Shown: positions 3,278 through 60,552 of the stretch, in pieces
Numbering within the stretch: the first letter of the stretch is position 1
How the letters are laid out: the number at the start of each line of letters is the position of its first letter
Virus record (IMG/VR): IMGVR_UViG_3300050343_000191
Span: 62,001-126,000 of that record
Length of the DNA: 64,000 nucleotides
Direction: 5' to 3' (one strand)
Translations under genes and position numbers: made by a program
Notes under the pieces: generated by a model
Database searches by the model: none
What the model was told of the DNA's origin: nothing
The model's input: only the letters and a program-made list of their open reading frames with translations

Positions 3278-4219
3278 TTACTTCTTCTTCTTTTTCTTCT
3301 TATGTGATCCGCAAGAAGATTCGATAATGCTTTGGATGAACTCTTCATCCAATTGATTCATTACATAATCTGCTTCTTTAATATCAGAAGCATGTCCTTC
3401 TTTAATCAGATAGTCTGCAATCACCTCGTAGTGAGCATAGATTGAAGGTACAGGATTTGCTCTAATATTCTTATATGCTTTAAGACTTACCTGATATCCA
3501 GGACTGTTCTTATAAAGATCCTTTGGTTGATTTTGCAATCTCCACCATCCAGCAGATTTGTTATTTGAAGATGAACTCTTTGCTTTTGCTGCTTTTGCTG
3601 CTTCTGCTGCTTTTGCATCTGCTGCTGCTTTTTCTGCTTCTCTTTGCTCTCTAGATCTTTTTTCTTCCGGCGTTTCCACCTTCTCTTCTGGATCTGATGT
3701 ATCTACCTTTGAATCAGTACTAGGATCTGATATGCCAGGAATTAACTTGTTATCTAAAGCGACTTTTGTACCAAGAGTAACAAGACCTGCAGCACCCGCA
3801 ACTGCAGCACCTTGTTTGATCTTTGTTTTTTGAGCAGATGGTATCTTATCTTTAAGTTTTCTAATCAGCGATGGTGGTTTAGTAGGATCAACTTTGGCAC
3901 CTGGTCTTGTTGCACCACTGGTAATAGGTCTTCCGCCTTTAGTTGTTGTGGGAGGTTTGCGGAGACGTACCTTTCCACCTCTACCAAAAAGTCTCATCAA
4001 GAATCCCGACATACCTCCTTTTTCACATATAAGTAAAAAGTCGGGATTACCTGTATCAATTGTCTCACTTAGAGTTATCGACTCGCAGATTTCTAATACT
4101 TTAGATTCATCATTTAAATTCCAAAATTCCATGATCTGATCTACATCATAACCTTCCTCAAGCATAGAGTAAGATATATGCAAAAATGTCTTTTGCTCTT
4201 CAGAAAGATTGTAATGCAT
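3278..4219 (-). CDS. Late hypothetical protein with two acidic EG[YH] domains and a poly-Lys tail
   Basis: 'MLEEGYDVDQI', 'YLIKEGHASDIKEADYVM', ends KKKKKKK; TAAATA at 4243-4248. Confidence 0.75.
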   Translation of the reverse strand: MHYNLSEEQKTFLHISYSMLEEGYDVDQIMEFWNLNDESKVLEICESITLSETIDTGNPDFLLICEKGGMSGFLMRLFGRGGKVRLRKPPTTTKGGRPITSGATRPGAKVDPTKPPSLIRKLKDKIPSAQKTKIKQGAAVAGAAGLVTLGTKVALDNKLIPGISDPSTDSKVDTSDPEEKVETPEEKRSREQREAEKAAADAKAAEAAKAAKAKSSSSNNKSAGWWRLQNQPKDLYKNSPGYQVSLKAYKNIRANPVPSIYAHYEVIADYLIKEGHASDIKEADYVMNQLDEEFIQSIIESSCGSHKKKKKKK

Positions 4220-45621: not shown

Positions 45622-47088
45622 TAGTTTTTTAGCGGTATGTTTACAATATCGTAATTAAAATTTTCTTCGTTATAAACTTTAATTCTTTCAATTAGATGAT
45701 TAAGTGTATAGTTTCTCCTGGATTTGTAGGATATGTCGTCAGCAATGTCATAGAGAGTTGCCTTGGTCTTGTTATTTCCTTTCCTGAGCACCCTTCCAAT
45801 AGACTGGAGATTCCGAATTCTAGATTTGGATGGAGAAGCAAAAATAACATTATGGAGGTTTTTGATATTAATACCTGTACTGAAAGTTCCATATGAAGCA
45901 ACAATAATCGCATTATTTTCTTTTTCAGTAATCTCTCTTACTTGTTCTCTATCTTTGTTGCCACACCACCGTGAACAAAAAAGACTTGACTTTCTTCAAC
46001 AGTTACTATTATTTATTAAATCATATAATGGTTGACCATGACCTTCAACTCTTGCAAAAAGAATTAAGAGTATTTCCTTTGAGATCTAGTGCAAGATTTC
46101 TAATGAACTTATTTCTACGTTTTTCATGATTGATAATATACTGAACTTCTTCCTCAAAGTTTTCAAATTTATGTGCTGGATGCTTCAGTAGAAGTACATT
46201 AATATCCAGTTTAGCAACATGCCCCTTCTTCATCAGTTCTTCGGTACGAATGATTTTATATGAAGGACCAAACAATCCTTCAAGAACCCATTTATGAGTT
46301 TGTGTCCATCAAGAGTTCCGGTAAATCCAAAACGATATTTTGCATCAGCAAGTTTTGTCATTATAGATATTAATGACTTACTTTTGAACTGGTGTGCCTC
46401 ATCCCCAACAACTACGTTAAATCGTTCAAAATATTTTCGGGGGAGTTTGTAGATAGACTGCCAGGTAGTAATGATAACTTGAGAATCTGTTTCTCTTTCT
46501 TCCCAGCATAGATCTTGTGGCAATATGAACCTACATCCCAACCATAGTCTGCAAAATCTTTATACATCTGCTCTACTAGCGAAGTCGTCGGAACAACTAT
46601 CAGAGTATTTTGTCCTTTCTCAACGTAATATCTCACAATCGAATATATCATCAGAGACTTTCCAGAAGCAGTTGGGGATATCAGCAACTTTCTATTATGT
46701 CTTTAAGGCGTCGTATACTCCTTCTAACTTGGTAATCTCTCGGGGAATACTTACAAATAGCATTCATATAATCTTTTACACCTTCCTTTGAGATAAAGTT
46801 ATTCGTCTCAAAAGGAAGACCATAATACTTACTTATCTACAAACTCATAAGTATATTCGTGATCATCACAAAATTTTGTAACCTTATCTAACAACCCAAC
46901 GTATATCTCTCCAGTCTGGGTATTAAATAATCTTATCTTTCCATCCCAGTATTTACTACGATACGAGGACATAAACTTTGCACCAGGAACCTCAAAGGTA
47001 AACTGGTCTGATAATTCGTAGTATACGTGAGGTTCTGCCTTAACCTGTAAATAACTTCATTCTTTTTTGATATAATCAAATGAGACAT
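45621..47088 (-). CDS. uvsW: SF2 RNA-DNA helicase (frameshifted)
   Basis: SPTASGKS, DEAH, GFTGT, QSIGRVLR. Confidence 0.93.
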
Positions 47089-47114
47089 AACTCATAGGTT
47101 CACCTATGAAGTAT

Positions 47115-47323
47115 TTAGTTCATACTGTCAAACTGATGTTCTAAATGTATAAGTCTATAAAAATTATCTCTCATCGCGCATATACCAAAGATGCTCCTGT
47201 TCTTCATATGGTTCTAGCGTGCTCCTGGCCATTTTTAATAGCTTTCTAAGTCCAGAATGATGAAAAGACTAATTCGTCTGATATAGTTAAATTTACTTGG
47301 TAATCAAATTCTTGATCTTCCAT
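47115..47323 (-). CDS. Small hypothetical protein (frameshifted)
   Basis: MEDQEFDYQV..RPYEEQEHLW. Confidence 0.45.
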
Positions 47324-47759
47324 TAGAATCCTGCTTGGAACTTGTGCCAGTCAATAGCATTTTTAATTTGAAAGGTTCTATTTGATACTGTCTTGATAAT
47401 TTCTTCTAAAAATTTTAAAGCATCAGTATCGTAGTAGCGAATCTTCATATCAATCTTATTTAACTTCGATCATCTGCATCTAGATACCTTTGAATGCATC
47501 TTTATCTCGGACTTTATATGGAAAAGGTTCTTCTTCATACACCTCTGCTGTCTGCCTTTCCTGTGTAAAAGTTATGATCGTTCAATTTTACTTTGTTATA
47601 AGTTGCCCTCTTGCTTTCTCTCTCAAAAGAGTGATAGTATTGTATAATTGTATAATACTTTGAATGAAGTTGTGGAATTTTTAGTGATTCATCATGTAGA
47701 TTATCAGGGTCGATTTGAGAATCTTTCTGCCACATTTCCTGAATTTTTTCAAGGTCCAT
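47323..47759 (-). CDS. uvsY: Recombination mediator (frameshifted)
   Basis: MDLEKIQEMWQKDS..IPQLHSKY..RTFQIKNAIDW. Confidence 0.9.
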
Positions 47760-48309
47760 TAGGGTGTTCTGTTATCAGCAGCTAATACATTATACACAGT
47801 ATACTTGAAAGTGACCTCTGCTGTAAAGTAGTTGATATCAGTGATCACTTGCATCAAATTCTAAAGAAGTCAAGTGAGACAGGAAAACATATCTTAGAAT
47901 TTTACAATAGCAACATCTCTAAAGTTGCTATTTAAAATATGAAGACTTCCATCACTAAATTGTTCATTTAAATCTCTTACTCCATCATTATTTGTTGTTA
48001 AATCTTTAAATTGTTGTGGTTTCTGGAAAACCTAAACCAGTCAATCCAATTATGAACTATGCCATATAATTTTCCATATTCTCATCAACTAAAAATCTTA
48101 AGGAAAAATCTCCATAAGTAAGTTTTTCTCCAGGAATATCAATATCTTTAAGATAAGATGGTTGTATTGCAGTTCCTAAACTAATTTCTGGTATTCTAGC
48201 AGAATTACAGAAAAAATCAACCTTTGGTTCTTTTGATAGATGTAAATTTAAAACCAACCAGATAAAAAATTTCTATTGTTTATCTGGTTGGCCCAACTAA
48301 ATTTGCCAT
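47759..48309 (-). CDS. gp3: Tail tube terminator (frameshifted)
   Basis: RNFLS..KVDFFCN..FLVDENMENY. Confidence 0.85.
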
Positions 48310-48333
48310 CATCGTTTTTATTTGTATTTAGAT

Positions 48334-48360
48334 AAAAAAAAGAGGGTCCGAAGACCCTCT
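48334..48360 (-). terminator. UUCG intrinsic terminator after gp23
   Basis: AGAGGGTC-TTCG-GACCCTCT-T7. Confidence 0.9.
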
Positions 48361-48381
48361 GTAAAATATGTGAACCGTGGA

Positions 48382-49751
48382 TCACATGAGGTTTTGAACC
48401 TTGACTCTTCTGTAGTAACGGTTGGCGTTCTTGAGTAAGAGCCAAGACCAGCGCCAACGTTGCACCTTCTAGCGAAGGGGTTAGCGACCATGCCGTAGCG
48501 AGTCTTGAATCCGATTTTGGGCTGGAAGGTGTTCTCTCCAACTGCACGAACCATCTGAAGAGGAACGTATGGGCAGTAGAACAGACCTGCGTCATAAGGT
48601 GAAGAACCCTTATAACCAGCAACGTAGTACTGATAGCAGCAGCACGTTAGCAGAATAAGGATCGATGTAGACCGATACTTACCTTGCAAGAACACCAGCG
48701 AAGGTGTTACCGGTGTCATCAACGTTCAGGTTGCGTTGAGTGCAGGGGTGTAATCAAGTACACCAGCCATGGTCAGTGCGGAAGCAACGTCTGCAGAACA
48801 CAGAATCATGTTGCCCTTTCCTCTACGAGTCTTTGTGCGATTGCGTTAGCATCTCGCTCGATTTGGAAAATAAGACCTTTGAACTTCTCAACAGACCAAC
48901 GACCGTTGGAGTCAACGTCAAGGTCAAAAGTACCAGCGGTTAGCAACATTAGTTGAGCACCAGTTCAGCAACTTGTAGATGGTTCTGATGACTTCACGGT
49001 TGATTTCAGCAAGGATCTCAGTGGAGAGAATGTTGGCAAGTTCTGCTCAGCATTCAGACCATGAATTGCCTTGAGGTCTTGTGCCAGTTCTAAGTGAATA
49101 CTCTGCTTTCAGAGCTCTGGACTTAGCAGTAACGGTGACTTTCTCGATCGAGAATGCCATCTCGTTGAATGTCATTACCGTGCCATCTCCAAGTGCTTCA
49201 GCGTCGTCGTGGTACGCATACCCTGACCTACGTTGTAAGCTTGGGCTTGGGTTAACTCAGAGACCAGGATTGGTTACCAGCTGTGCAGTAGTACCTAAAC
49301 CAACGTTGCAGCAGTTGTCCTGCCGGGTGAGATTGCCAGACCACCAGCATTCTGACCAGAGAATGCAGTATCTGCTTCGTCGAACAATGCTTCAGTTCCA
49401 CCTGATTGGTATAGCGGGAACGCATTGCGAAGATCAGTCCAGTAGGACCGTTCATTGGTTGAACGCCTGCGAGGTCATATGCGACCAAGTTAGGCATTGC
49501 GCGTCTGATCAGGAGATCAGAACGGGGTCGAAACCTGTTAGGGGCAAGAGCTCCAGATCCAGGTTACCAACAGAGTTGGTAGGAGCTTCAGAAAGGAATT
49601 CTCTTTCCTCTCTGAGCATGTTTTTCTTGGTTCTCCAGGAGAACTGCGGTAACCATTCTCTACGGTGGGAATCCTTGATGCCTCCGAGACCCTCGTAGTT
49701 GAGGATGGTGCCCACTTCTCCTGCAGGTGTTCAGCATTGAAACATTTGCAT
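48382..49751 (-). CDS. gp23: Major capsid protein (frameshifted)
   Basis: GVQPMNGPTGLIFAMRSRY, FYCPYVPL, FQPKIGFKTRYG. Confidence 0.97.
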
Positions 49752-49799
49752 TTGAATTTACCTTGTTAAAAAGTTTTAGTTTGATTTATAATTAAAAAA

Positions 49800-50916
49800 T
49801 CACTTTTTAGAAACTCTAGTCAGAGTATCGAGATAGGATTCCATTAAACCAGTACTGGTTGTGCAATGGACCTTCTGAACTCTTCGGAAATATTCTCAGA
49901 GTTGTCTCTTTGAGTACCAACGGACTCTGGGAAATAAGATTCTCTCAGAGTTACCAGTTTCTCACGATAGTTGTCTTCACTTTCAAACTCAACATTTTCA
50001 GCAAGAGAAGCGAGTTTATCCTTTCTGGGTGTCTGCAAGACCCTCAGAGACATCGCGAAAATTACATCAGCAACCGACTCAGCTAATCTACGATTAAGAG
50101 CAACATTTCTATCGATTTGCTCGTTGAGTTTACCTTCCATTTCATCTAATTTATCTACCATGCTCTCAAGTTACATCATATTTTTCTTCAGGGATTGTTA
50201 CATAATGTTCTTCAAAAAGACCCTTCATTCCGTCGAGGAATGATTCGGTCATTTCTGCTCTTGAGACCTTGCTCAACTGCGAGTTGATTTTCAGAATCCA
50301 CTCATCGGCAACATACTCAAGATATGAATCAACGCTCAGTCAGTTCTTCTTAATAACGGACAACTTCTTCTTCAGAGAGTCTGATTCGTATTGTGCTTTC
50401 AGTTCTTCTTGAATTTCGGCAACTTTAGTCTTAATAGCAGCTTCAAAGATGGTGCGTGCTTTCTCTTGGAACTCTTCGGAAAGTTCTTCACCCTCAAGAA
50501 GTGCTTCAACATCTTCTTCGATGTCAATCCTTCTCTTCGTGAGTTCTTCTTCAGTTTCTTCTTCTTCAGAACAACTTCTCTTCGGAAACTACATCTTCTT
50601 CAGATGCAGTGGTGTTTCTTCTTCGGACTACTTCACCTTCAACTTCCTCTTCTTCCTTCATACTTCTTAGGCATGGGAGCAGCAGGTTTACACATCTATT
50701 CACTTGCTTGACAGTTGCGATTTTGGTTCTGCGAGTTTAGTTAGAGTTGTCGTCAGGTCTTATAGTTTTCTGGAGTAGGACCGCCGAGATCTTCGTCTAC
50801 AGTTTGACCAGGGGTCCACCAGAAGCATTACTTCCGGATTTTGCATTGCTTCAGCAGGCAGCAGCTCCTTTAGTTACTACGTTTTCCATTTCTTGTAAAT
50901 TGCTACCAACGGACAT
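49800..50916 (-). CDS. gp22: Prohead core scaffold protein (frameshifted)
   Basis: DLGGPTPENY, TIFEAA, LASLAENVEF. Confidence 0.9.
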
Positions 50917-50956
50917 TTGATTTTATTAATTTTTAACTAATATATTTATTTATAAT

Positions 50957-51603
50957 TTAAAGATTTGATAAGAAATTATTGAATAATCTCAACTTATGCT
51001 CTTCAAGTTTTTTGATCAACGAGAGTATTAATTCTCTTCTGAGTTCTTTCTGCAAGTTGTTCACGAAGGATTCCTCCTTCCCAAACCCACTCTTTTCCTT
51101 CCATAATTCCTGAACAAAAGCATCAGGAGCAGAAGGATCGGCAACGATATCAGCAGCAGTTGCTAACATGAAATCTTCACCAACAACTTTACATACCTTC
51201 ATTGGTCTTCTTTTAATGAACCAACACCACGAGAAGAAACTCCAAGCATCACACCTTCATCGAGAAGTGAAGATGCAATTTTACCCATAGGAGTAAAGAA
51301 TTTGTGCCTTTACCTTTAAAATTATTACCTTCTCTGAGTGAGTGAAGTAATCTTATGAGAAACACGGTCAAGATTGACGGTAGGACCATCAGGATGACCA
51401 AGTTCTCCAAGAGCACGACCCTTATTAACGAAAGATTCGTTATATCGATCTACTTCTTTAGAAAGAGTAGTAATGGGATACATTCTTCCATTACGATTTT
51501 TGAGTTCACCTTGAAGGAATACACCTTCAATGTAAAGTTTTATTAGACCCTTACCTTCGGTAATAATCTGTACGTTTGAAATTTCTTCTGTGATAAGTTT
51601 CAT
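50957..51603 (-). CDS. gp21: Prohead protease (frameshifted)
   Basis: NRNGRMY, GELGHP, GVSSRG, DIVADPSAPDA. Confidence 0.93.
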
Positions 51604-51608
51604 TTTTA

Positions 51609-51857
51609 TTAACCTGTAAATCCTACTTTTCATCATGACAACTCCTGGTGCTGATGCAGAAATTATCTTGAGCACCTTTTTCTTGATATGTTCCAGGATC
51701 TAGGTGTGTTATCAGCATTACGGGCTTGATAGTCCAGCATTGAAGTACTTTCATAAGCAACACTTGACCACCCTTCATCTGCCACCATTGTGTGACTGAT
51801 TTTTTCCTGGTTGAGGAGAAACAGGTTGCAGTTTTCGTCGTAACGCTATGTTGCCAT
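51609..51857 (-). CDS. Garbled small gene upstream of gp21
   Basis: Fragments RYDENCN..DYQARNADNTP and ..KVGFTG in different frames. Confidence 0.4.
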
Positions 51858-52091
51858 TACTCAGAATCCTCTTCTGGTGCCAATGCATCAACTACTTCAT
51901 CTAAAAGTTCTTGCCATTAGTTTCCTTCCCCTTCGGAATTATCTTGCTGGTCATCAAACATGGATGCGCCAACTGTTGGACGAATAGTATTAATACGTTC
52001 TGCTGCTTTTGCATACAAAACATCTTTAATTCTGTCACTAATATCAGATGCCGACGAATCGGATCCGCACTAAATTTACAATTTCTTCCAT
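51857..52091 (-). CDS. Small prohead-associated protein (frameshifted)
   Basis: MEEIVNL..SDISDRIKDVLYAKAAERI; position between gp20 and gp21. Confidence 0.6.
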
Positions 52092-52118
52092 GAAAATTTA
52101 ATATATGTATATTTTATA

Positions 52119-53794
52119 TTTATATCTCGGCAGCTTTACCGTCTACTTCAGTCATTCCACCATCAATTTCAGGAACTTCCATCGGAACATCACCCATCAT
52201 TCCTTCTCACCTTCTTGTGGTAATGGTTCTCCAGTTACTGGATCAATTGCGACTGGATCTGGCAATAATACCTTTTTGATTTCATCTTCAATCTGTTCAT
52301 CAAGTTCAATGATTTCTCAGAATCAGTCTGACGAAGAACTTCTTACGAACATATTCGGTAGAGTAGTATTTTCCAATATATGGTTCCATAGTTGCAAGAA
52401 TGCCAAGTCTATTTTGAATTAACTCAGATTCTTTCAATTCTGCAAACTGATTATCATAAAGAAGTCATATTGAATATGATCACTTCATCTTTCCCAGTCT
52501 TCTGGGGTACAGACATTCTTCAGAATCAAGTTGAGTTCTGAGCATATCGTTGAACATTTGAGCAAAACGCTTTCTCAAACGACCAACAAACTTAGCAAAT
52601 TTCAAGTTCGTCACGAAGAATTTCTGAAGAACGACCAAGATTAAAACCACCATCAGCAGCGATTCTAGATTCAGGTACACCAAGTGCTCTATAAAGTTTC
52701 TTTTGGAAATACTCAATATCAGAGAGTTCTCCTAAATTCTGACCACCAGGAAGAGTTGTTATTTCAGTTCCTCTACCACCTTCTCTACGAGGTAACCAAA
52801 AATCTTCCAGCATACTCATAAACTTTTTGTCGTCACGAACTTCGCCAGTGTTGTGCATCATAGACTAGTTTATTTCTATAGCGAGACATAACCTCACGAG
52901 ATATTGCTCTGCTTTACTTTAGGAAGATTGCCAACATCAATATAAAAAATACGACGCTCTGGTGCGCGGGATAATCTATAGATGAACAAAGAATCCTCAA
53001 TCATTCTCAGTTGATTGAGTGCTTTAATTGCTTTATGAAGATATGATAGAACTGTATTCTTTATTTCTATCTACAAGACCAGAAGTGCAATATGTAATTG
53101 AATCTTTTGCAATTTTTACAGATTTCCTTTACCATTTAAAGATCCTGTTGGATATTTGGTGATGGAGTATACTGGAAAAACTCTTCAAACTCTGGTCCAT
53201 TAGCATACTTTTCTGTTCATTAGATTTGCCATTTAAATTTATTTGCCTACTCGTGCAAATAAGTATCATATCTAGTCTCGTCTTTCTTTTCTTGGCGAAT
53301 ATACTTGATCTTTCAATGGATCAATATATCTAAGTTCTTGAATACCTTCTTGAGGTTTTTTAAGATCAATTACTTTTAAATAATATACTCTTCCATCAAC
53401 ATACCAATTTCTAAAAATTTCGTGTGACTTTCTATCAAAATCTAAAATTTCTTTAATATACTTAAACTCTGATCTGATTCTTTTTTAAATTGTCGCTTGC
53501 ATTCAGATTTGATAGTTCAATTTCTACAGGAGAATCATAAAGATCACTAACGATTGCTTCATTAACAACATCTTCAATAGCACCATCCGCTTCGGGATGG
53601 AGTGACATTTCTCTATATCTTCTAATTAAATCATGTTCTGTTTTATAGACACCTTCAATATCTACATATTGTCCATAAAATCCACTACTAATATAGTTAT
53701 CAACCCCGTCCTGATTAGTTTCAGGAACGGGGGAAATAACTGAAGGTGACTTCTTTTGCTTGTCGTCAATAGAAAAACCAAAAAGTTTGGCCAT
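52119..53794 (-). CDS. gp20: Portal protein (frameshifted)
   Basis: MAKLFGFSI, RAPERRIFYIDVGN, EDFWLPRREGGRGTEI. Confidence 0.95.
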
Positions 53795-53826
53795 AATAAC
53801 TTAAAGTGCCTATTACCTTCTTCTAT

Positions 53827-56740: not shown

Positions 56741-56953
56741 CTACCAATCTGGATATTCCCAAACATTATTATCCTTTTTAACTCTTTTTTTAGTACAATC
56801 TTTACACTCATAAGAGTATGATGATACTACAGGACCTCTATCTTTTCTAGTCCTATAAAATCCATCAACTAAATTTTTCATTTCACCACAAGTTCTACAT
56901 TTTCTTTCGTAAAGAAGTAAATGTCCTAATTTTAGTTGACTATCTAAGTCCAC
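56741..56953 (-). CDS. Small Zn-finger protein
   Basis: CRTC..CKDC. Confidence 0.65.
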   Translation of the reverse strand: MDLDSQLKLGHLLLYERKCRTCGEMKNLVDGFYRTRKDRGPVVSSYSYECKDCTKKRVKKDNNVWEYPDW

Positions 56954-58602
56954 TAGTAATAATCCCACATATATGATTTATCTCCATATTCATCAGTATG
57001 CCAACGATCACCATTAGTATCTGTAAATGAAACTTCACCATTAATTCCATCATCTAAAAATCCAAATGGTGCCATATCCTGTTCAATTTGATTTTTCTGC
57101 TCATCATAAATTTTTTTACGGACATCAGTATCCGTCATCTCTTTAAAGTAATCTTGTGCTACCAACCAAGAGAAGATAACAAGGCACATTGCCAAGTCAT
57201 CATTACATCCCTCTTCCGCTTCAAACGAATTGTGTTTTTGAGCAAACGTCGTAAGTTCAGATATGATCTCATAATCAAGAGTCAACAACTTATCATCTTC
57301 TAAAAGAGTTTTTAAGTTTGAACAACCAAGTCTCTTTACCTGCGCTGTTGTTCTAACTCCCATTTGAGATTTTTTACCCGAAAATCCATGACCAACAACT
57401 TGACCAGCACGACCTCTCATTGCTGCCATTAGCATATTTTCATATTCTAAATCATAATGAAGAATACTTGCTACTTGCTCACCAATATCATTAACTTCAA
57501 TCAATACCCAAGCATTATTATACCCCTTTAAAGTTTCTTGAATCACATTTGGGAATAACATTGGTTTGATTTCATTATTCCTATACTTTGCTACAATTTT
57601 GTAAGGAAATTCTGTAATATCAAACACTACAAATGCAGAGTAGTCATTACCCAAACCACGAGCAACGTCTACAGTCATAAGATAATTGTGTTCTGGTCTT
57701 GGTTTTTCGTAAATATCTAATCCAGCGTTTCTTTGGATGGGATCTTCATAGACTAGATTCCTGAGTTTTGCCGGATTTATAAGGGTATTGACAGAACCAA
57801 GAAACTCACACTCGAACTCGACTTTGAATTGCTGTTCTGATGTGTTAGCAATCGTCTGTTCTTTCCATACTTGATCTCTTCCAGGAACCTCGGACCAATG
57901 AACATCAGTTGGAATGTATTCATTTTTACCTTTTTCTGAGTCGTGCCACATTCGGTAGAAATGATTCATACCGCGTGGCGTGGATACAATGATTACCTTT
58001 GTGCTTTGTCCAGAAGAAATAGTAGGATAAACAGAGGCAAAGAAGTCATCAGCAATGTGATTCGGGATGAACGCGAATTCGTCAAGAAAGATGACATTAT
58101 AGGATCCGCCTCGGACAGCAGATGACGAAGTAGAGTTAGATGAAATTTTGGATCCATTTTCAAGTTCTAAACTACCTTTGTTCCAAGATATAATACCCTG
58201 CTGCATCCACTTTGGCAAATTTTCATAAGCAAGTTGTAATCTTTGAAGGAGATCTCTTGCAGTAGATGCCTTGTTCGCCAAAATTGCAATATTAACATTA
58301 TCGTTAAAAACTGCATAGTGTAAAAGATATGATATACACGTTGTAGACTTACCAGTCTGTCGTGGCATTTTGCAGATATTAAATCTATTATCATGGAAGT
58401 TTTGAATCAACTTCTCTTGAAAAGGATACATATCAAAATTAACAAGACCATAATCCAGAGATACAATCTTGATATAATTTCTTGCAAAATAAACAGGGTC
58501 ATTCTTACATCTGATAAACTCAATGACCTGCTCCTCTGTAAATTCGTGAGGAGTATTTGCTTTTTTTAGATTCGGATTACCAAGATAAATGTTATCACTC
58601 AT
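56953..58602 (-). CDS. gp17: Terminase large subunit
   Basis: PRQTGKST, LDEFAF, DVARG, DDLAM. Confidence 0.97.
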   Translation of the reverse strand: MSDNIYLGNPNLKKANTPHEFTEEQVIEFIRCKNDPVYFARNYIKIVSLDYGLVNFDMYPFQEKLIQNFHDNRFNICKMPRQTGKSTTCISYLLHYAVFNDNVNIAILANKASTARDLLQRLQLAYENLPKWMQQGIISWNKGSLELENGSKISSNSTSSSAVRGGSYNVIFLDEFAFIPNHIADDFFASVYPTISSGQSTKVIIVSTPRGMNHFYRMWHDSEKGKNEYIPTDVHWSEVPGRDQVWKEQTIANTSEQQFKVEFECEFLGSVNTLINPAKLRNLVYEDPIQRNAGLDIYEKPRPEHNYLMTVDVARGLGNDYSAFVVFDITEFPYKIVAKYRNNEIKPMLFPNVIQETLKGYNNAWVLIEVNDIGEQVASILHYDLEYENMLMAAMRGRAGQVVGHGFSGKKSQMGVRTTAQVKRLGCSNLKTLLEDDKLLTLDYEIISELTTFAQKHNSFEAEEGCNDDLAMCLVIFSWLVAQDYFKEMTDTDVRKKIYDEQKNQIEQDMAPFGFLDDGINGEVSFTDTNGDRWHTDEYGDKSYMWDYY

Positions 58603-58617
58603 AATAAAACTCCTAAA

Positions 58618-60552
58618 TCAACATCTCCAGCGTTTACGTGCCTTACAGATTTTTTTGTCTGGGGTCTTTGAACAATCAATATTATGCATCTTCATCTGAC
58701 CTTTAGAACGACTGCAATAGTTCTTACGGCGATTGGCATCTTTACTTCCCTTTTTAACTTTACCAGTTACTGCAGTCTGTAACTTTGAACCTGGATTTTC
58801 GCGCTTATAAGCATTTACAGATTTCTGACTCATACCATCAACACCGTCTTTACGGTTTGATTTTTGCCAGTCTTCCTTTACCTCTTGCTTACCATAAGTT
58901 TTGCAGGGATCTTTTCCACAACCACAGTTCTTTTTCTTTTTTTCTTGCAGATCCATATCTGATTTCCAATCAGAGAAATGTGCTTTTACACAATTTGGAT
59001 ATCTCTTTCCAAACATTGTCTTCATACCCTTTTTCTTATATCCTTTCCAACACTTTTCATCAAGATTAGCAGCAACTTTAGCAACTTTTTTAGATTGCTT
59101 TGCGTGCATCTTAGAAGCACCTGCTAACTGCTTTGAGATCTCTTTCAGTTTATCTTGTTTAGAGTTTGCTTCATCAAGCATATCACTTCCAAGACCTTGA
59201 GATTGCTGAAGTGGTTCGTTAGAAATCAAATCTATAGATTCTACTTCAGTTGCATGGAAATCATCTCTCCAGTTGGAGAACTCATAACTTTCATTTTTGG
59301 TCTTATTGCCCCAATTCTTAGCACCAACTTTGCGGCACTTAACTAGAGCACCTGATGCATATGCACTTGGCCAGACAGAATAACGTGACTTGACTTTATG
59401 GTAACAAGCATCTTTGGTGCCACTACCTTTTCCTTTTCTATCCTTCCCTTCTTCTACAATTTCACCTTCTGGTTCATATGAGTTTCTAAGTCTCTGCATT
59501 TTTGGATCCAAAGTTCCTGGTTTTGCGCCAGCAGCATTTTCAATTGCTCTTTGTCTAGCACCAGCACCAAACGGTTTTCCGTTAATAGTAGCATTTTGTC
59601 TGGCATTATCTAATGCTTCATCACCCTTTCTCTTAAGATATTTTCCTGCTTTATAAAGACCATATGCTCCTGCAGCAATACCAAGACCTCCAAGAACACC
59701 TTCGTCTAGTTCAGTTTTCCAGTTTGAGTAAGATTCTTTCATTTTTTTCTTTGGTTTGTCAGTAGAAACATAGGTTGGTTTAGCTGCTCCAGACTTTTGT
59801 TGTTGTCCGGGATCTTGTCTTGACTTTCTTGTGTCAGCCGATCGAAGTTCTTTCTTCGACATACTGGCTTTCTTGGCCGAGGAGTAACATTTAGGTGTTC
59901 CCTTCTCACCAGGTTCATTAGCACAAGGGGAACCATCAGATTGAACCCAACCGGGTTTTCCGTCTTTTGATTTAGATTTACCAAACCAATCACGGAGACC
60001 TTCCTCACTTACAGTCTGCTCATTCATTTTATCTGCGTAACCAGCAGCAGCATCAGTGTCGTGTGCGGTATCAGTAATCTTTGCTTGCATCCAGGCAGGA
60101 ATATCCTTTTCCTTTTTACCTAATGCCTTTCTCAACTTTCTGATGTTTTCTGCTGACTTTTTGAGTTGACTCTGTGCCATTGCAACTTCATGATCACCAT
60201 TTTTTCCTTCACTTACCTTTTCTCTACCCCTACAATGGGATTTCTGAGAGAATCCTTTTGGATTATCGCAATCGATGGATTTTTTATATTTCGCACTCCA
60301 TGCTTCAGAGACGCCACCTCCGCCGCCTTCACCACCTCCATCAGAAGAGGAGCCATTCCCGTTGCCATTGCCATTTGAGTAATTTCCATTCCCATTACCA
60401 TTCTTTTTTTTACCTTCAGTTTCCTTTTCGTCCTGATGCTCATTATCCCGCATCAAATATCCACTGGACATTACATGATAACCTTTAGGAATTTTCTTGC
60501 ATTTTTTGGAGGTATTACAGTAGTAATAACCCTTTTTACAGGACTTTGCCAT
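58618..60552 (-). CDS. Modular 644-aa late protein between gp16 and gp17
   Basis: Many short Cys/Lys-rich modules separated by x-x-E sites; TAAATA at 60575-60580. Confidence 0.8.
   Translation of the reverse strand: MAKSCKKGYYYCNTSKKCKKIPKGYHVMSSGYLMRDNEHQDEKETEGKKKNGNGNGNYSNGNGNGNGSSSDGGGEGGGGGVSEAWSAKYKKSIDCDNPKGFSQKSHCRGREKVSEGKNGDHEVAMAQSQLKKSAENIRKLRKALGKKEKDIPAWMQAKITDTAHDTDAAAGYADKMNEQTVSEEGLRDWFGKSKSKDGKPGWVQSDGSPCANEPGEKGTPKCYSSAKKASMSKKELRSADTRKSRQDPGQQQKSGAAKPTYVSTDKPKKKMKESYSNWKTELDEGVLGGLGIAAGAYGLYKAGKYLKRKGDEALDNARQNATINGKPFGAGARQRAIENAAGAKPGTLDPKMQRLRNSYEPEGEIVEEGKDRKGKGSGTKDACYHKVKSRYSVWPSAYASGALVKCRKVGAKNWGNKTKNESYEFSNWRDDFHATEVESIDLISNEPLQQSQGLGSDMLDEANSKQDKLKEISKQLAGASKMHAKQSKKVAKVAANLDEKCWKGYKKKGMKTMFGKRYPNCVKAHFSDWKSDMDLQEKKKKNCGCGKDPCKTYGKQEVKEDWQKSNRKDGVDGMSQKSVNAYKRENPGSKLQTAVTGKVKKGSKDANRRKNYCSRSKGQMKMHNIDCSKTPDKKICKARKRWRC

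What the first reader, a model, noticed from the sequence alone, without database searches (positions are those of the whole stretch)
58618..60552. Gene between the terminase subunits looks like a polyprotein of about ten peptide modules
Seen: distinct modules bounded by VSE|AWS, VSE|GKN, VSE|EGL, MKE|SYS, LDE|GVL, IVE|EGK, LDE|ANS, LDE|KCW, LQE|KKK and VKE|DWQ, with a recurring linker motif (ESYSNWKTEL, ESYEFSNWRDDF, HFSDWKSDM). Several modules are Cys-paired, Lys-rich mini-domains (CKKGYYYC, CWKGY..PNC, CGCGKDPC). Inference: a cassette gene cut by gp21 into several small DNA- or membrane-binding peptides, with modules gained and lost by recombination.
Basis: partly seen in the sequence, partly recalled or inferred. 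Interest (0 to 1): 0.65.

Follow-up and report, generated by a model that had tools for sequence, protein, structure and literature searches.

The report
Modular virion polyprotein between terminase genes
A T4-like cyanophage gene between its two terminase genes strings about ten small, mostly basic, cysteine-paired mini-proteins together through junctions that match the cut site of the phage head protease. Other marine phages encode the same units as separate small genes, so it is probably a precursor cut into small virion peptides, but no cleavage has been shown.

Summary
ORF 58618-60552 (minus strand, 644 aa, pI 9.7) lies between terS and terL of a T4-like cyanomyovirus, and every quoted motif is present.

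- **Site enrichment.** [LIVM]-x-Glu occurs 13 times against 4.6 expected. Twelve of the 13 sites lie at module junctions.
- **Junction conservation.** In 82 related ORFs, 196 of 250 distinct internal module starts have such a site just upstream (16% expected), in otherwise variable contexts.
- **Module exchange.** Modules are present, absent, reordered and swapped between relatives, with patchwork identity.
- **Stand-alone units.** Three units (G, D, M) are separate tandem small genes without these junctions in podovirus-like marine phages that lack the T4-type protease.
- **Virion association.** The family is T4-GC119, found by mass spectrometry in S-SM1 and S-SCSM1 virions.
- **Positive control.** Known gp21 substrates of P-SSM2 (gp21, gp22, the gp23 propeptide) show the same site enrichment.

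Best reading: a cargo polyprotein taken into the prohead and cut by gp21 into peptides of 1.4-10.5 kDa, functionally like an array of T4 internal proteins. Cleavage, head location and function are inferred, not shown. Half the sites have Val or Met, not Leu or Ile, at P3. This is a new variant of a known kind, of moderately high interest.

The parts
58618..60552 (-). Whole ORF (P0001): 644 aa, 71 kDa, pI 9.7, 16.8% Lys, 18 Cys. Its start codon overlaps the gp16 stop (TAATG). gp17 starts 15 nt after its stop, behind an AGGAG.
60436..60552 (-). Module A (aa 1-39): N-terminal beta-hairpin mini-domain with conserved Cys5, Cys12 and Cys18, then a P-K-G-Y-H..M..G..L-M stretch.
   Evidence: Nearly invariant Cys; pLDDT 75-90; HMM hits in 60 ORFs
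60304..60435 (-). Gly/Asn-rich disordered spacer (aa 40-83) ending in the V-S-E junction (P1 Glu83).
   Evidence: pLDDT below 50; G-G-G-V-S-E precedes module B in 19 of 26 contexts
60208..60303 (-). Module B (aa 84-115): W-S-x-K-Y-K-K-S-I-D-C..N-P-K-G-F-S-Q..H-C, with Cys95 and Cys107. Ends in V-S-E (Glu115).
   Evidence: Some relatives start their ORF exactly at this module.
60004..60207 (-). Module C (aa 116-183): helical, no Cys. Ends in M-N-E (Glu178) and V-S-E (Glu183).
   Evidence: Helices 121-173. Its position differs between phages: before D here, after D in S-T4, after G in S-SRM01.
59734..60003 (-). Module D (aa 184-273): L-R-D-W-F-G..G-W-V..P-C..K-C domain with invariant Cys210 and Cys222 and a basic tail. 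Ends in M-K-E (Glu273). It is the most widespread unit.
   Evidence: Invariant columns; 366 phage records; an 82-aa stand-alone gene in L103 and a stand-alone ORF in CRP-901; no PDB fold match
59701..59733 (-). Junction element 1 (aa 274-284): S-Y-S-N-W-K-T-E-L-D-E, acidic, 11 aa, bounded by two hydrophobic-x-Glu sites.
59452..59700 (-). Module F (aa 285-367): a Gly/Ala-rich hydrophobic stretch (285-306) then helices. Ends in I-V-E-E (Glu367 and Glu368). It is the most variable unit.
59293..59451 (-). Module G (aa 368-420): K-D-A-C-Y..W-P-S-A-Y-A-S-G-A-L-V-K-C-R-K, with Cys383 and Cys406. It is almost invariant and weakly DUF5872-like.
   Evidence: Invariant columns 380-416; 2270 stand-alone proteins of 29-93 aa; DUF5872 below threshold; low AF2 confidence
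59170..59292 (-). Module H (aa 421-461): acidic spacer starting with junction element 2 (E-S-Y-E-F-S-N-W-R-D-D-F) and ending in L-D-E (Glu461).
59056..59169 (-). Module I (aa 462-499): a single long basic helix ending in L-D-E (Glu499). It holds the only intra-module site, L-K-E (Glu471).
58981..59055 (-). Module J (aa 500-524): K-C-W-K-G-Y..G-K-x-Y-P-N-C beta-hairpin with Cys501 and Cys521.
   Evidence: pLDDT about 83; 40 of 41 contexts are preceded by hydrophobic-x-Glu; depth peak in metagenomes
58942..58980 (-). Junction element 3 (aa 525-537): H-F-S-D-W-K-S-D-M-D-L-Q-E, ending at Glu537.
58873..58941 (-). Module L (aa 538-560): K-K-K-K-N-C-G-C-G-K-D-P-C peptide with 3 Cys. Ends in V-K-E (Glu560). 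It is present in few relatives.
58621..58872 (-). Module M (aa 561-644): DUF6321 domain, net charge +18, with conserved Cys613 and Cys644.
   Evidence: PF19846, 36.6 bits against a 28.5 cut-off; pLDDT 81-91; stand-alone genes in pelagiphage HTVC024P, MaMV-DC and L103
60552..60983 (-). gp16, small terminase subunit, directly upstream and translationally coupled.
   Evidence: gp16 is directly upstream in 36 of 48 related loci
56953..58602 (-). gp17, large terminase subunit, directly downstream.
50950..51675 (-). gp21-type prohead protease (Peptidase_S77), the proposed processing enzyme. In this record it is broken by frameshifts and stops, as are its neighbours gp20, gp22 and gp23.

Best explanation
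The gene encodes a cargo polyprotein of the phage head. It is made late, translationally coupled to the small terminase, as one 71-kDa chain of about ten small independent units, most of them basic and several held by one Cys pair. The units are separated by disordered or acidic spacers. Each spacer ends in hydrophobic-x-Glu, the recognition motif of the T4-type prohead protease gp21. The precursor is taken into the prohead core, where gp21 cuts after the junction Glu residues. This releases peptides of 1.4-10.5 kDa that stay in the head with the DNA and may leave with it at infection. In function it would be an array of T4 internal-protein-like cargoes loaded through one precursor. The units evolve as cassettes: recombination between co-occurring phages adds, removes, reorders and swaps them.

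Shown: the modular anatomy, junction motif enrichment and conservation, cassette exchange, virion association of homologues, and the existence of the same units as separate genes elsewhere. Inferred: uptake into the head, cleavage by gp21, and what the peptides do (charge neutralisation of DNA or action on the host).
For: 1. Thirteen [LIVM]xE sites against 4.6 expected. The strict [LI]xE form is also enriched, and the xD and [SAG]xE controls are not.
2. Twelve of the 13 sites lie at module borders. Eight or nine of the ten main sites lie in low-pLDDT linkers.
3. Across 82 homologous ORFs, 196 of 250 distinct internal module starts have hydrophobic-x-Glu ending within -7..+2 of the start, against 16% expected. 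Only 51 have the Asp version. P2 and the upstream residues vary freely, and the following module can be any of B, C, D, F, G, I, J or M.
4. Indel boundaries fall within 2 aa of a site for 32% of events against 10% under the null (p 0.004).
5. Units G, D and M are separate tandem genes, each starting M-A-K-K-K with no such junction, in a podovirus-like Tara contig. G, D and an A-like unit are separate in Roseobacter phage CRP-901, and M is separate in pelagiphage HTVC024P and MaMV-DC. Those three cultured phages have no Peptidase_S77 match, whereas P-SSM2 and S-SCSM1, which carry fused genes, do.
6. Of the 120 best stand-alone G proteins, 98 carry an N-terminal leader holding a hydrophobic-x-Glu; most are acidic and amphipathic and are followed by poly-Lys. 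This layout is like the T4 IP propeptide M-K-T-Y-Q-E-F-I-A-E.
7. In P-SSM2 the known gp21 substrates show the same enrichment: gp21 z 4.0, gp22 z 3.4, and four sites in the first 57 aa of gp23. gp19 and gp20 have z near 0.
8. The family is T4-GC119, detected in S-SM1 virions with 13 peptide counts (PMC3037559 Table S8). S-SCSM1 ORF29 is a virion protein by MS (PMC9602691).
9. The genome encodes a gp21 homologue.
Against: No direct evidence of cleavage exists for any family member: no fragment sizes, N-termini or semi-specific peptides. Five of the ten main sites have Val or Met at P3, whereas the published T4 consensus is L/I-x-E. There is no T4-like N-terminal targeting propeptide; the protein starts directly with module A, so how it would enter the prohead is unknown. 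Virion detection does not tell head from tail or neck. Syn9 has the gene, but the protein was not detected in its virion, and S-PM2 lacks the gene. A z-score above 3 for the motif count is reached by 5 of 229 ORFs in this genome, so count alone is weak. Stand-alone DUF6321 in pelagiphage HTVC024P sits among small genes near replication and recombination genes (a DnaA-like initiator, a strand-annealing protein), not among head genes. The gp21 gene of this record is frameshifted, probably an assembly fault. The sample of phages with and without the protease is small (2 against 3).
Confidence: 0.55

Rival explanations
1. An uncleaved multi-domain virion protein. The mini-domains stay joined as beads on a flexible string, for example as a DNA-contacting or neck or tail accessory protein. 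The hydrophobic-x-Glu residues are just the preferred make-up of linker ends or helix N-caps.
For: AF2 shows beads joined by disordered linkers, which is equally typical of uncleaved proteins. At site 183 a helix starts directly after the Glu (185-192), so a capping role is possible. Half the sites deviate from L/I at P3. No cleavage data exist.
Against: The stand-alone versions of G, D and M lack the motif, so it is not part of the folds. Glu is preferred over Asp about 4 to 1 at junctions although Asp is nearly as common overall. There is no common structural context after the sites: helix, strand or coil. The motif is kept while everything around it changes.
Confidence: 0.25
2. A non-head protein. 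The chain, cleaved or not, acts in the infected cell, for example as nucleic-acid-binding host take-over or anti-defence units, and its detection in virions is adventitious.
For: DUF6321 alone sits among small genes near DnaA-like and recombination genes in pelagiphage HTVC024P, and near helicases in MaMV-DC. The protein was not detected in the Syn9 virion. Leader-bearing G proteins lie near metabolic genes in a large uncultured virus.
Against: Two independent virion proteomes detect the family, and other records annotate homologues as structural proteins. The gene is fixed inside the late structural operon, between terS and terL, in 36-37 of 48 loci and is coupled to terS. In CRP-901 the units follow a DUF2213 gene in the structural region.
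Confidence: 0.12
3. The conserved junctions serve recombination rather than proteolysis: short shared sequences at module borders act as cross-over points for cassette exchange.
For: Cassette exchange is real. Metagenome contigs show in-frame joints near module borders.
Against: Only an amino-acid pattern is kept. P3 is any of V, L, M, I; P2 is any of D, S, N, E, K, G; P1' varies. No shared DNA stretch therefore exists at most junctions. This idea does not exclude cleavage.
Confidence: 0.05
4. An artefact: a chimeric or mis-assembled ORF in a record that has frameshifts elsewhere.
For: gp20-gp23 of the same record are broken.
Against: The identical ORF occurs in independent contigs and runs. 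More than 50 intact full-length relatives exist, and there are 398 phage records with homologues.
Confidence: 0.01

Closest known systems
T4-GC119 'structural protein' of cyanomyoviruses (Sullivan et al. 2010, PMC3037559), e.g. P-SSM2 gp123, the S-SM1 orthologue and S-SCSM1 ORF29; PHROGs 727, 3477 and 12753
   Same: Sequence homology over modules D, G, J and M. It lies in the g15-g18 hyperplastic region. Gene size is highly variable, 276-2985 nt. It was detected in virions.
   Different: This member is one of the richer versions, with ten units including B, C, F, I and L. It sits between g16 and g17, whereas P-SSM2 gp123 sits between g15 and g16. In the papers searched here the family is only called hypothetical or structural; no modular or polyprotein reading was found.
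T4 internal proteins IPI, IPII, IPIII and Alt, with their capsid targeting sequence and gp21 processing
   Same: Small, basic, non-essential, polymorphic cargo proteins. Their propeptide ends in hydrophobic-x-Glu and is cut by gp21. Stand-alone G proteins with acidic leaders have the same layout. The junction element has an aromatic residue at P7, a hydrophobic one at P3 and Glu at P1, like Y4/I8/E10 of the T4 propeptide.
   Different: There is no sequence similarity. Here many cargoes are fused in one chain with internal sites. There is no N-terminal propeptide. Cleavage and head location are unproven.
T4 prohead core proteins gp22, gp67 and gp68, cut by gp21 into several internal peptides
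   Same: Multiple hydrophobic-x-Glu sites along one chain, giving small peptides that remain in the head. P-SSM2 gp22 shows a comparable enrichment.
   Different: gp22 is an acidic helical scaffold without folded Cys-paired basic domains. This protein is basic and modular and has no scaffold signature.
Head proteins of giant phages (phiKZ, 201phi2-1, SPN3US) processed at several sites by the prohead protease
   Same: Many head and ejection proteins are cut by a T4-related protease, and the fragments are retained in the head (papers listed; general knowledge).
   Different: The motif there is S/A/G-x-Glu, which is not enriched here. There is no homology.
Pfam DUF6321 and DUF5872 small viral proteins
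   Same: Module M is a DUF6321 member. Module G resembles the first 44 positions of DUF5872.
   Different: Those families are described as single small proteins of unknown function. Here they are fused with eight other units.

Membership tests
T4-GC119 / PHROG 727 cyanomyovirus virion protein family | Sequence homology to family members | tested here: met
   phrog_727 E 1.5e-84 and phrog_3477 E 1.6e-56. Module HMMs D, J, G and M hit P-SSM2 gp123, which is T4-GC119, at E 1e-4 to 1e-37.
T4-GC119 / PHROG 727 cyanomyovirus virion protein family | Location in the g15-g18 hyperplastic region of a T4-like cyanophage | tested here: met
   Between gp16 and gp17. The same holds in 36-37 of 48 related loci. 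The region is described in PMC2984593 and PMC3037559.
T4-GC119 / PHROG 727 cyanomyovirus virion protein family | Presence in purified virions | not testable with these tools
   Shown only for the homologues in S-SM1 and S-SCSM1. This phage is uncultured.
gp21-processed head cargo (T4 internal-protein type) | Genome encodes a T4-type prohead protease (Peptidase_S77) | tested here: met
   PF03420 match, 66 bits, at window about 51193-51540. The gene is frameshifted in this record.
gp21-processed head cargo (T4 internal-protein type) | L/I-x-Glu cleavage motifs at the borders of the mature parts | tested here: inconclusive
   Ten junction sites, of which five have L or I and five have V or M at P3. 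The motif position is conserved in relatives. The specificity of the cyanophage enzyme is not known.
gp21-processed head cargo (T4 internal-protein type) | N-terminal capsid targeting propeptide of about 10-20 aa | tested here: not met
   The N-terminus is module A itself, and the first hydrophobic-x-Glu ends at residue 83. Only internal propeptide-like elements exist.
gp21-processed head cargo (T4 internal-protein type) | Actual cleavage, packaging inside the head and ejection | not testable with these tools
   This needs virion N-terminomics or top-down MS.
gp21-processed head cargo (T4 internal-protein type) | Sequence similarity to T4 IPI, IPII or IPIII | tested here: not met
   BLASTP against IPIII gives E 0.31. 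No PHROG or Pfam link was found.
Pfam DUF6321 (PF19846) | Score above the gathering threshold | tested here: met
   36.6 bits against a 28.5 cut-off, residues 571-642.
Pfam DUF5872 (PF19197) | Score above the gathering threshold | tested here: not met
   13.3 bits for residues 384-421, and 19 bits for the CRP-901 stand-alone unit, against a cut-off of 27.5. The Atlas lead scores 0.84.

The most novel reading that the evidence does not exclude
Marine phages share a toolkit of tiny Cys-paired basic proteins (units G, D, M and others). T4-like cyanophages have fused this toolkit into one head-targeted precursor with protease-site junctions. A single loading event would then deliver about ten independently evolving, freely swappable peptides into the capsid and possibly into the host. 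That would be a polyprotein version of the T4 internal-protein system and a recombination hotspot for phage-host arms-race cargo. The recurring S-N-W-R element would be an internal capsid-targeting or processing signal.
Probability: 0.35. Interest if true: 0.75.

Novelty: new variant of a known kind. Interest (0 to 1): 0.62.

Why it matters
T4-like cyanophages are among the most abundant viruses in the sea, and this gene family is present in nearly all of them (15 of 16 genomes in PMC3037559; 398 phage records here). It is still annotated only as hypothetical or structural.

If the polyprotein reading holds, three things follow:
- It would explain a large part of the long-noted hypervariability between g15 and g18.
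- It would identify the missing internal proteins of cyanomyoviruses, in which T4-type gp67, gp68 and internal-protein genes have not been annotated as such.
- It would show a way for a DNA phage to package many small cargo peptides in fixed proportion through one precursor.

It also links hundreds to thousands of orphan mini-proteins of 50-95 aa in podoviruses and other marine viruses to a common role. The prediction is cheap to test by re-searching existing virion mass-spectrometry data.

Tried and rejected
- **Family libraries.** Pfam, NCBIfam and PHROGs gave no function. The only hits were DUF6321, a sub-threshold DUF5872 match, and PHROGs of unknown function.
- **Structure.** The PDB sequence search found nothing (best E 0.68). 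Foldseek of the module D model against the PDB found nothing (best E 3.5). That model has a mean pLDDT of only 65. The whole-protein model averages 56, and the invariant module G is below 50, so fold-based function calls were not attempted further.
- **Protein Atlas.** The search on module G gave only leads below 0.9.
- **T4 IPIII.** BLASTP gave no significant similarity (E 0.31). A W-R-T-D-L-N-I-E stretch in IPIII resembles the junction element but is within chance.
- **Motif-count scan.** A genome-wide scan by motif count alone is noisy (5 of 229 ORFs above z 3) and was not used as the main argument.
- **Short module D proteins.** Most hits of the word search were frameshifted fragments from error-prone assemblies and were not used as evidence for stand-alone genes.
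- **Host virus of leader-bearing G proteins.** It could not be identified. Their records are not held for whole-record search, and PhoH gave only distant jumbo-phage hits.
- **Metatranscriptomes.** These runs hold exact-match fragments, but contigs cannot prove transcription.
- **Not run.** The large profile search and the complex predictor were left out, because the family is already well populated and no binding claim is made.
Full report
**Setting.** The window is part of a 231-kb IMG/VR record of a T4-like cyanomyovirus. On the minus strand the order is gp15-like, gp16 (TerS), the 644-aa ORF, gp17 (TerL), a 75-aa endonuclease VII-like ORF, gp18 and gp19. The ORF's ATG overlaps the gp16 stop (TAATG). 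gp17 starts 15 nt after its stop, behind an AGGAG. It therefore belongs to the late structural operon. The region between g15 and g18 is the known hyperplastic region of cyanomyoviruses (PMC2984593, PMC3037559).

**Check of the observation.** [LIVM]-x-Glu occurs 13 times against 4.6 +/- 1.9 in shuffles (p about 2e-4). The strict T4 form [LI]-x-Glu occurs 6 times against 2.3 (p 0.02). [LIVM]-x-Asp (4 against 4.8) and the giant-phage motif [SAG]-x-Glu (11 against 10.7) are not enriched. The ORF ranks second of 229 ORFs of the genome for this enrichment, but five ORFs exceed z 3, so the count alone is weak. The ORF is confirmed by independent contigs at 100% and 99.5% identity and by error-free contigs in several metagenome studies.

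**Anatomy.** The protein is 71 kDa with pI 9.7, 16.8% Lys and 18 Cys.
- An AlphaFold2 model built on 40 relatives gives a beads-on-a-string picture. Confident small units lie at 1-39, 121-175, 190-247, 300-350, 457-525 and 600-644. They are separated by low-confidence stretches that hold eight or nine of the ten junction sites.
- Conserved Cys occur in pairs within units: 5/12/18, 95/107, 210/222, 383/406, 501/521 and 613/644.
- Cutting at the ten sites would give eleven pieces of 1.4-10.5 kDa. All are basic except the 11-aa linker S-Y-S-N-W-K-T-E-L-D-E.
- Only the last unit has a Pfam family, DUF6321. Unit G is weakly DUF5872-like.

**Relatives and the junction motif.** The phage collection holds 398 records with homologues, none covering 80% of the protein. 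Eighty IMG/VR loci were fetched.
- HMMs of ten units were searched in 82 homologous ORFs. Of 250 distinct internal unit starts, 196 (78%) have hydrophobic-x-Glu ending within -7..+2 residues, against 16% expected from the density of the motif in these proteins. Only 51 have the Asp version.
- The residues further upstream, P2 and P1' vary widely. The pattern kept is a hydrophobic P3, a free P2 and a strict Glu at P1. That is the form of a protease specificity and cannot be a conserved DNA stretch.
- A second element, S-[ND]-W-[RK]-x-[DE]-hydrophobic, occurs in 92 distinct contexts. It is usually followed within a few residues by hydrophobic-x-Glu and then by different units: F, J, L, M and others.
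In a 51-sequence alignment, 32% of indel boundaries of at least 10 aa fall within 2 aa of a site against 10% for circularly shifted sites (p 0.004). Most other boundaries lie at the starts of the linker elements or inside the variable unit F.

**Cassette behaviour.** Unit order differs between phages:

| Phage | Unit order |
|---|---|
| This phage | A-B-C-D-F-G-I-J-L-M |
| S-SRM01 | B-D-G-C-F-J-M |
| S-T4 | D-C-G-J-M |
| S-SCSM1 | A-D-G-J-M |
| P-SSM2 gp123 | D-J-G-M |

- Close relatives show patchwork identity. L010 is 100% identical in A, B, H and L but 52% in D, and it lacks I and J. L055 is 100% identical in D only.
- Some relatives start their ORF exactly at a unit border.
- In metagenome contigs laid on the gene, depth peaks fall on units J, G and D.
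- One in-frame joint skips 366 nt (residues 58-179: the rest of the Gly/Asn spacer, B and most of C). It appears in three runs.
- Gain, loss and exchange of units by recombination is therefore well supported.

**The same units as separate genes.**
- A podovirus-like Tara contig (with DNA polymerase A and a 5'-3' exonuclease) carries three adjacent small genes: G (53 aa), D (82 aa) and M (95 aa). Each starts M-A-K-K-K and has no hydrophobic-x-Glu leader.
- Roseobacter phage CRP-901 has G, D and an A-like unit as separate small ORFs after a DUF2213 gene.
- Pelagiphage HTVC024P and Microcystis phage MaMV-DC have M alone.
- These three cultured phages have no Peptidase_S77 match. P-SSM2 and S-SCSM1, which carry fused genes, do.
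- The junction motif is therefore not part of the folds. It appears where the units are fused and a gp21-type protease is present.
- The word search found 2270 stand-alone G proteins of 29-93 aa. Of the best 120, 98 carry an N-terminal leader holding a hydrophobic-x-Glu; most are acidic and amphipathic and are followed by poly-Lys. This is the layout of T4 internal proteins, which start M-K-T-Y-Q-E-F-I-A-E before the gp21 cut. Their viruses could not be identified.

**Virion association and the protease.**
- T4-GC119 is listed as a structural protein detected in S-SM1 virions with 13 peptide counts. It was not detected in Syn9 and is absent from S-PM2. Gene sizes run from 276 to 2985 nt (PMC3037559 Table S8).
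- S-SCSM1 ORF29, with units A, D, G, J and M, is annotated as a virion protein in a study that identified 45 virion proteins by MS.
- T4 gp21 cuts after Glu in L/I-x-Glu. It removes the targeting propeptides of internal proteins and cuts core proteins into several peptides (PMC9026906).
- As a positive control, in P-SSM2 the motif is enriched in gp21 (z 4.0) and gp22 (z 3.4), and it occurs four times in the first 57 residues of gp23, including F-L-S-E before A-P-N-V. gp19 and gp20 are at z near 0.
- The present ORF, at z 4.2, behaves like the known substrates.

**Explanation and its limits.** The most likely reading (about 0.55) is a cargo polyprotein cut by gp21 inside the prohead into small basic peptides. 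It would be an array version of the T4 internal-protein principle, with units exchanged as cassettes.
- No cleavage data exist for any family member.
- Half of the sites have Val or Met at P3.
- There is no N-terminal targeting peptide.
- The function of the peptides is unknown. DNA charge neutralisation, action on the host and membrane activity of the Gly/Ala-rich stretch at 285-306 are all untested ideas.
- The main rival (about 0.25) is an uncleaved multi-domain virion protein.
- A non-head role (about 0.12) and a purely recombinational role of the junctions (about 0.05) are less likely.
- An artefact is excluded.

**Comparison with what is known.** The gene is a member of T4-GC119 / PHROG 727, a family known only as hypothetical or structural. 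It works like, but is not homologous to, T4 internal proteins and gp22/gp67/gp68. One defining feature, the N-terminal targeting propeptide, was tested and not met, so it is not filed as a member. No paper in the searchable library describes the modular or polyprotein nature of this family. I rate it a new variant of a known kind, with interest 0.62.

Noticed in passing
window about 46000-53800, minus strand: The head-core genes gp20 (portal), gp21 (protease), gp22 and gp23 (major capsid protein) are each split over several frames with many in-frame stops, while all flanking structural genes are intact. This looks like an assembly or consensus fault in a conserved, high-coverage stretch.
   Followed up: partly
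window 56741-56968, minus strand: A 75-aa endonuclease VII-like ORF (phrog_4723, E 4e-32) overlaps the end of gp17 and sits between gp17 and gp18, as in several cultured cyanophages.
   Followed up: no
L103:4864-5701 (Tara podovirus-like contig): Tandem stand-alone genes for units G (53 aa), D (82 aa) and M (95 aa), each starting M-A-K-K-K. A 38-aa Lys-rich ORF precedes them, just downstream of the DNA polymerase A and exonuclease genes.
   Followed up: partly
L088:2980-3757 (Roseobacter phage CRP-901): Four small ORFs in a row after a DUF2213 gene and a 456-aa protein. They are unit G (unannotated in the record), unit D (unannotated), an A-like P-K-G-Y-H-W-M unit (unannotated) and an 'HVA1 family protein' whose C-terminus recalls unit B.
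   Followed up: partly
proteins P0101-P0187 (e.g. P0104, P0157, P0178); L100/L101:6001-6237: A large class of stand-alone unit-G proteins from uncultured marine viruses has a conserved acidic leader of about 20 aa (I-I-x-E-E-L-x-x-V-L-D-E), then 6-15 Lys/Arg, then the domain. The encoding contig also carries ClpP-like, Hc1, PhoH2-like and mannose-metabolism genes. The virus type is unknown.
   Followed up: partly
window 60016-60381: Contigs in two DNA runs and one RNA run join 60015 to 60382. This is an in-frame 366-nt skip that removes residues 58-179, so a shorter natural allele co-occurs with this one.
   Followed up: no
G000:C1:186663-189155 (outside the window); window 3278-4219 and 1206-2918: Other ORFs of the genome have a strong [LIVM]xE excess: an 830-aa ORF at z 4.3, a 313-aa ORF at z 3.9 and a 570-aa ORF at z 3.3. 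They may be further protease substrates or chance.
   Followed up: no
window 59293-59451 (unit G): The most conserved unit, with 37 invariant or nearly invariant columns, gets pLDDT below 50 in the whole-protein model. It may need a partner, a metal or a disulfide to fold.
   Followed up: no
L098:5835-6416 (T4 ipIII): T4 IPIII contains W-R-T-D-L-N-I-E, which resembles the cyanophage junction element S-N-W-R-T-D-L..x-E. The BLASTP E-value is 0.31, so this is within chance.
   Followed up: no
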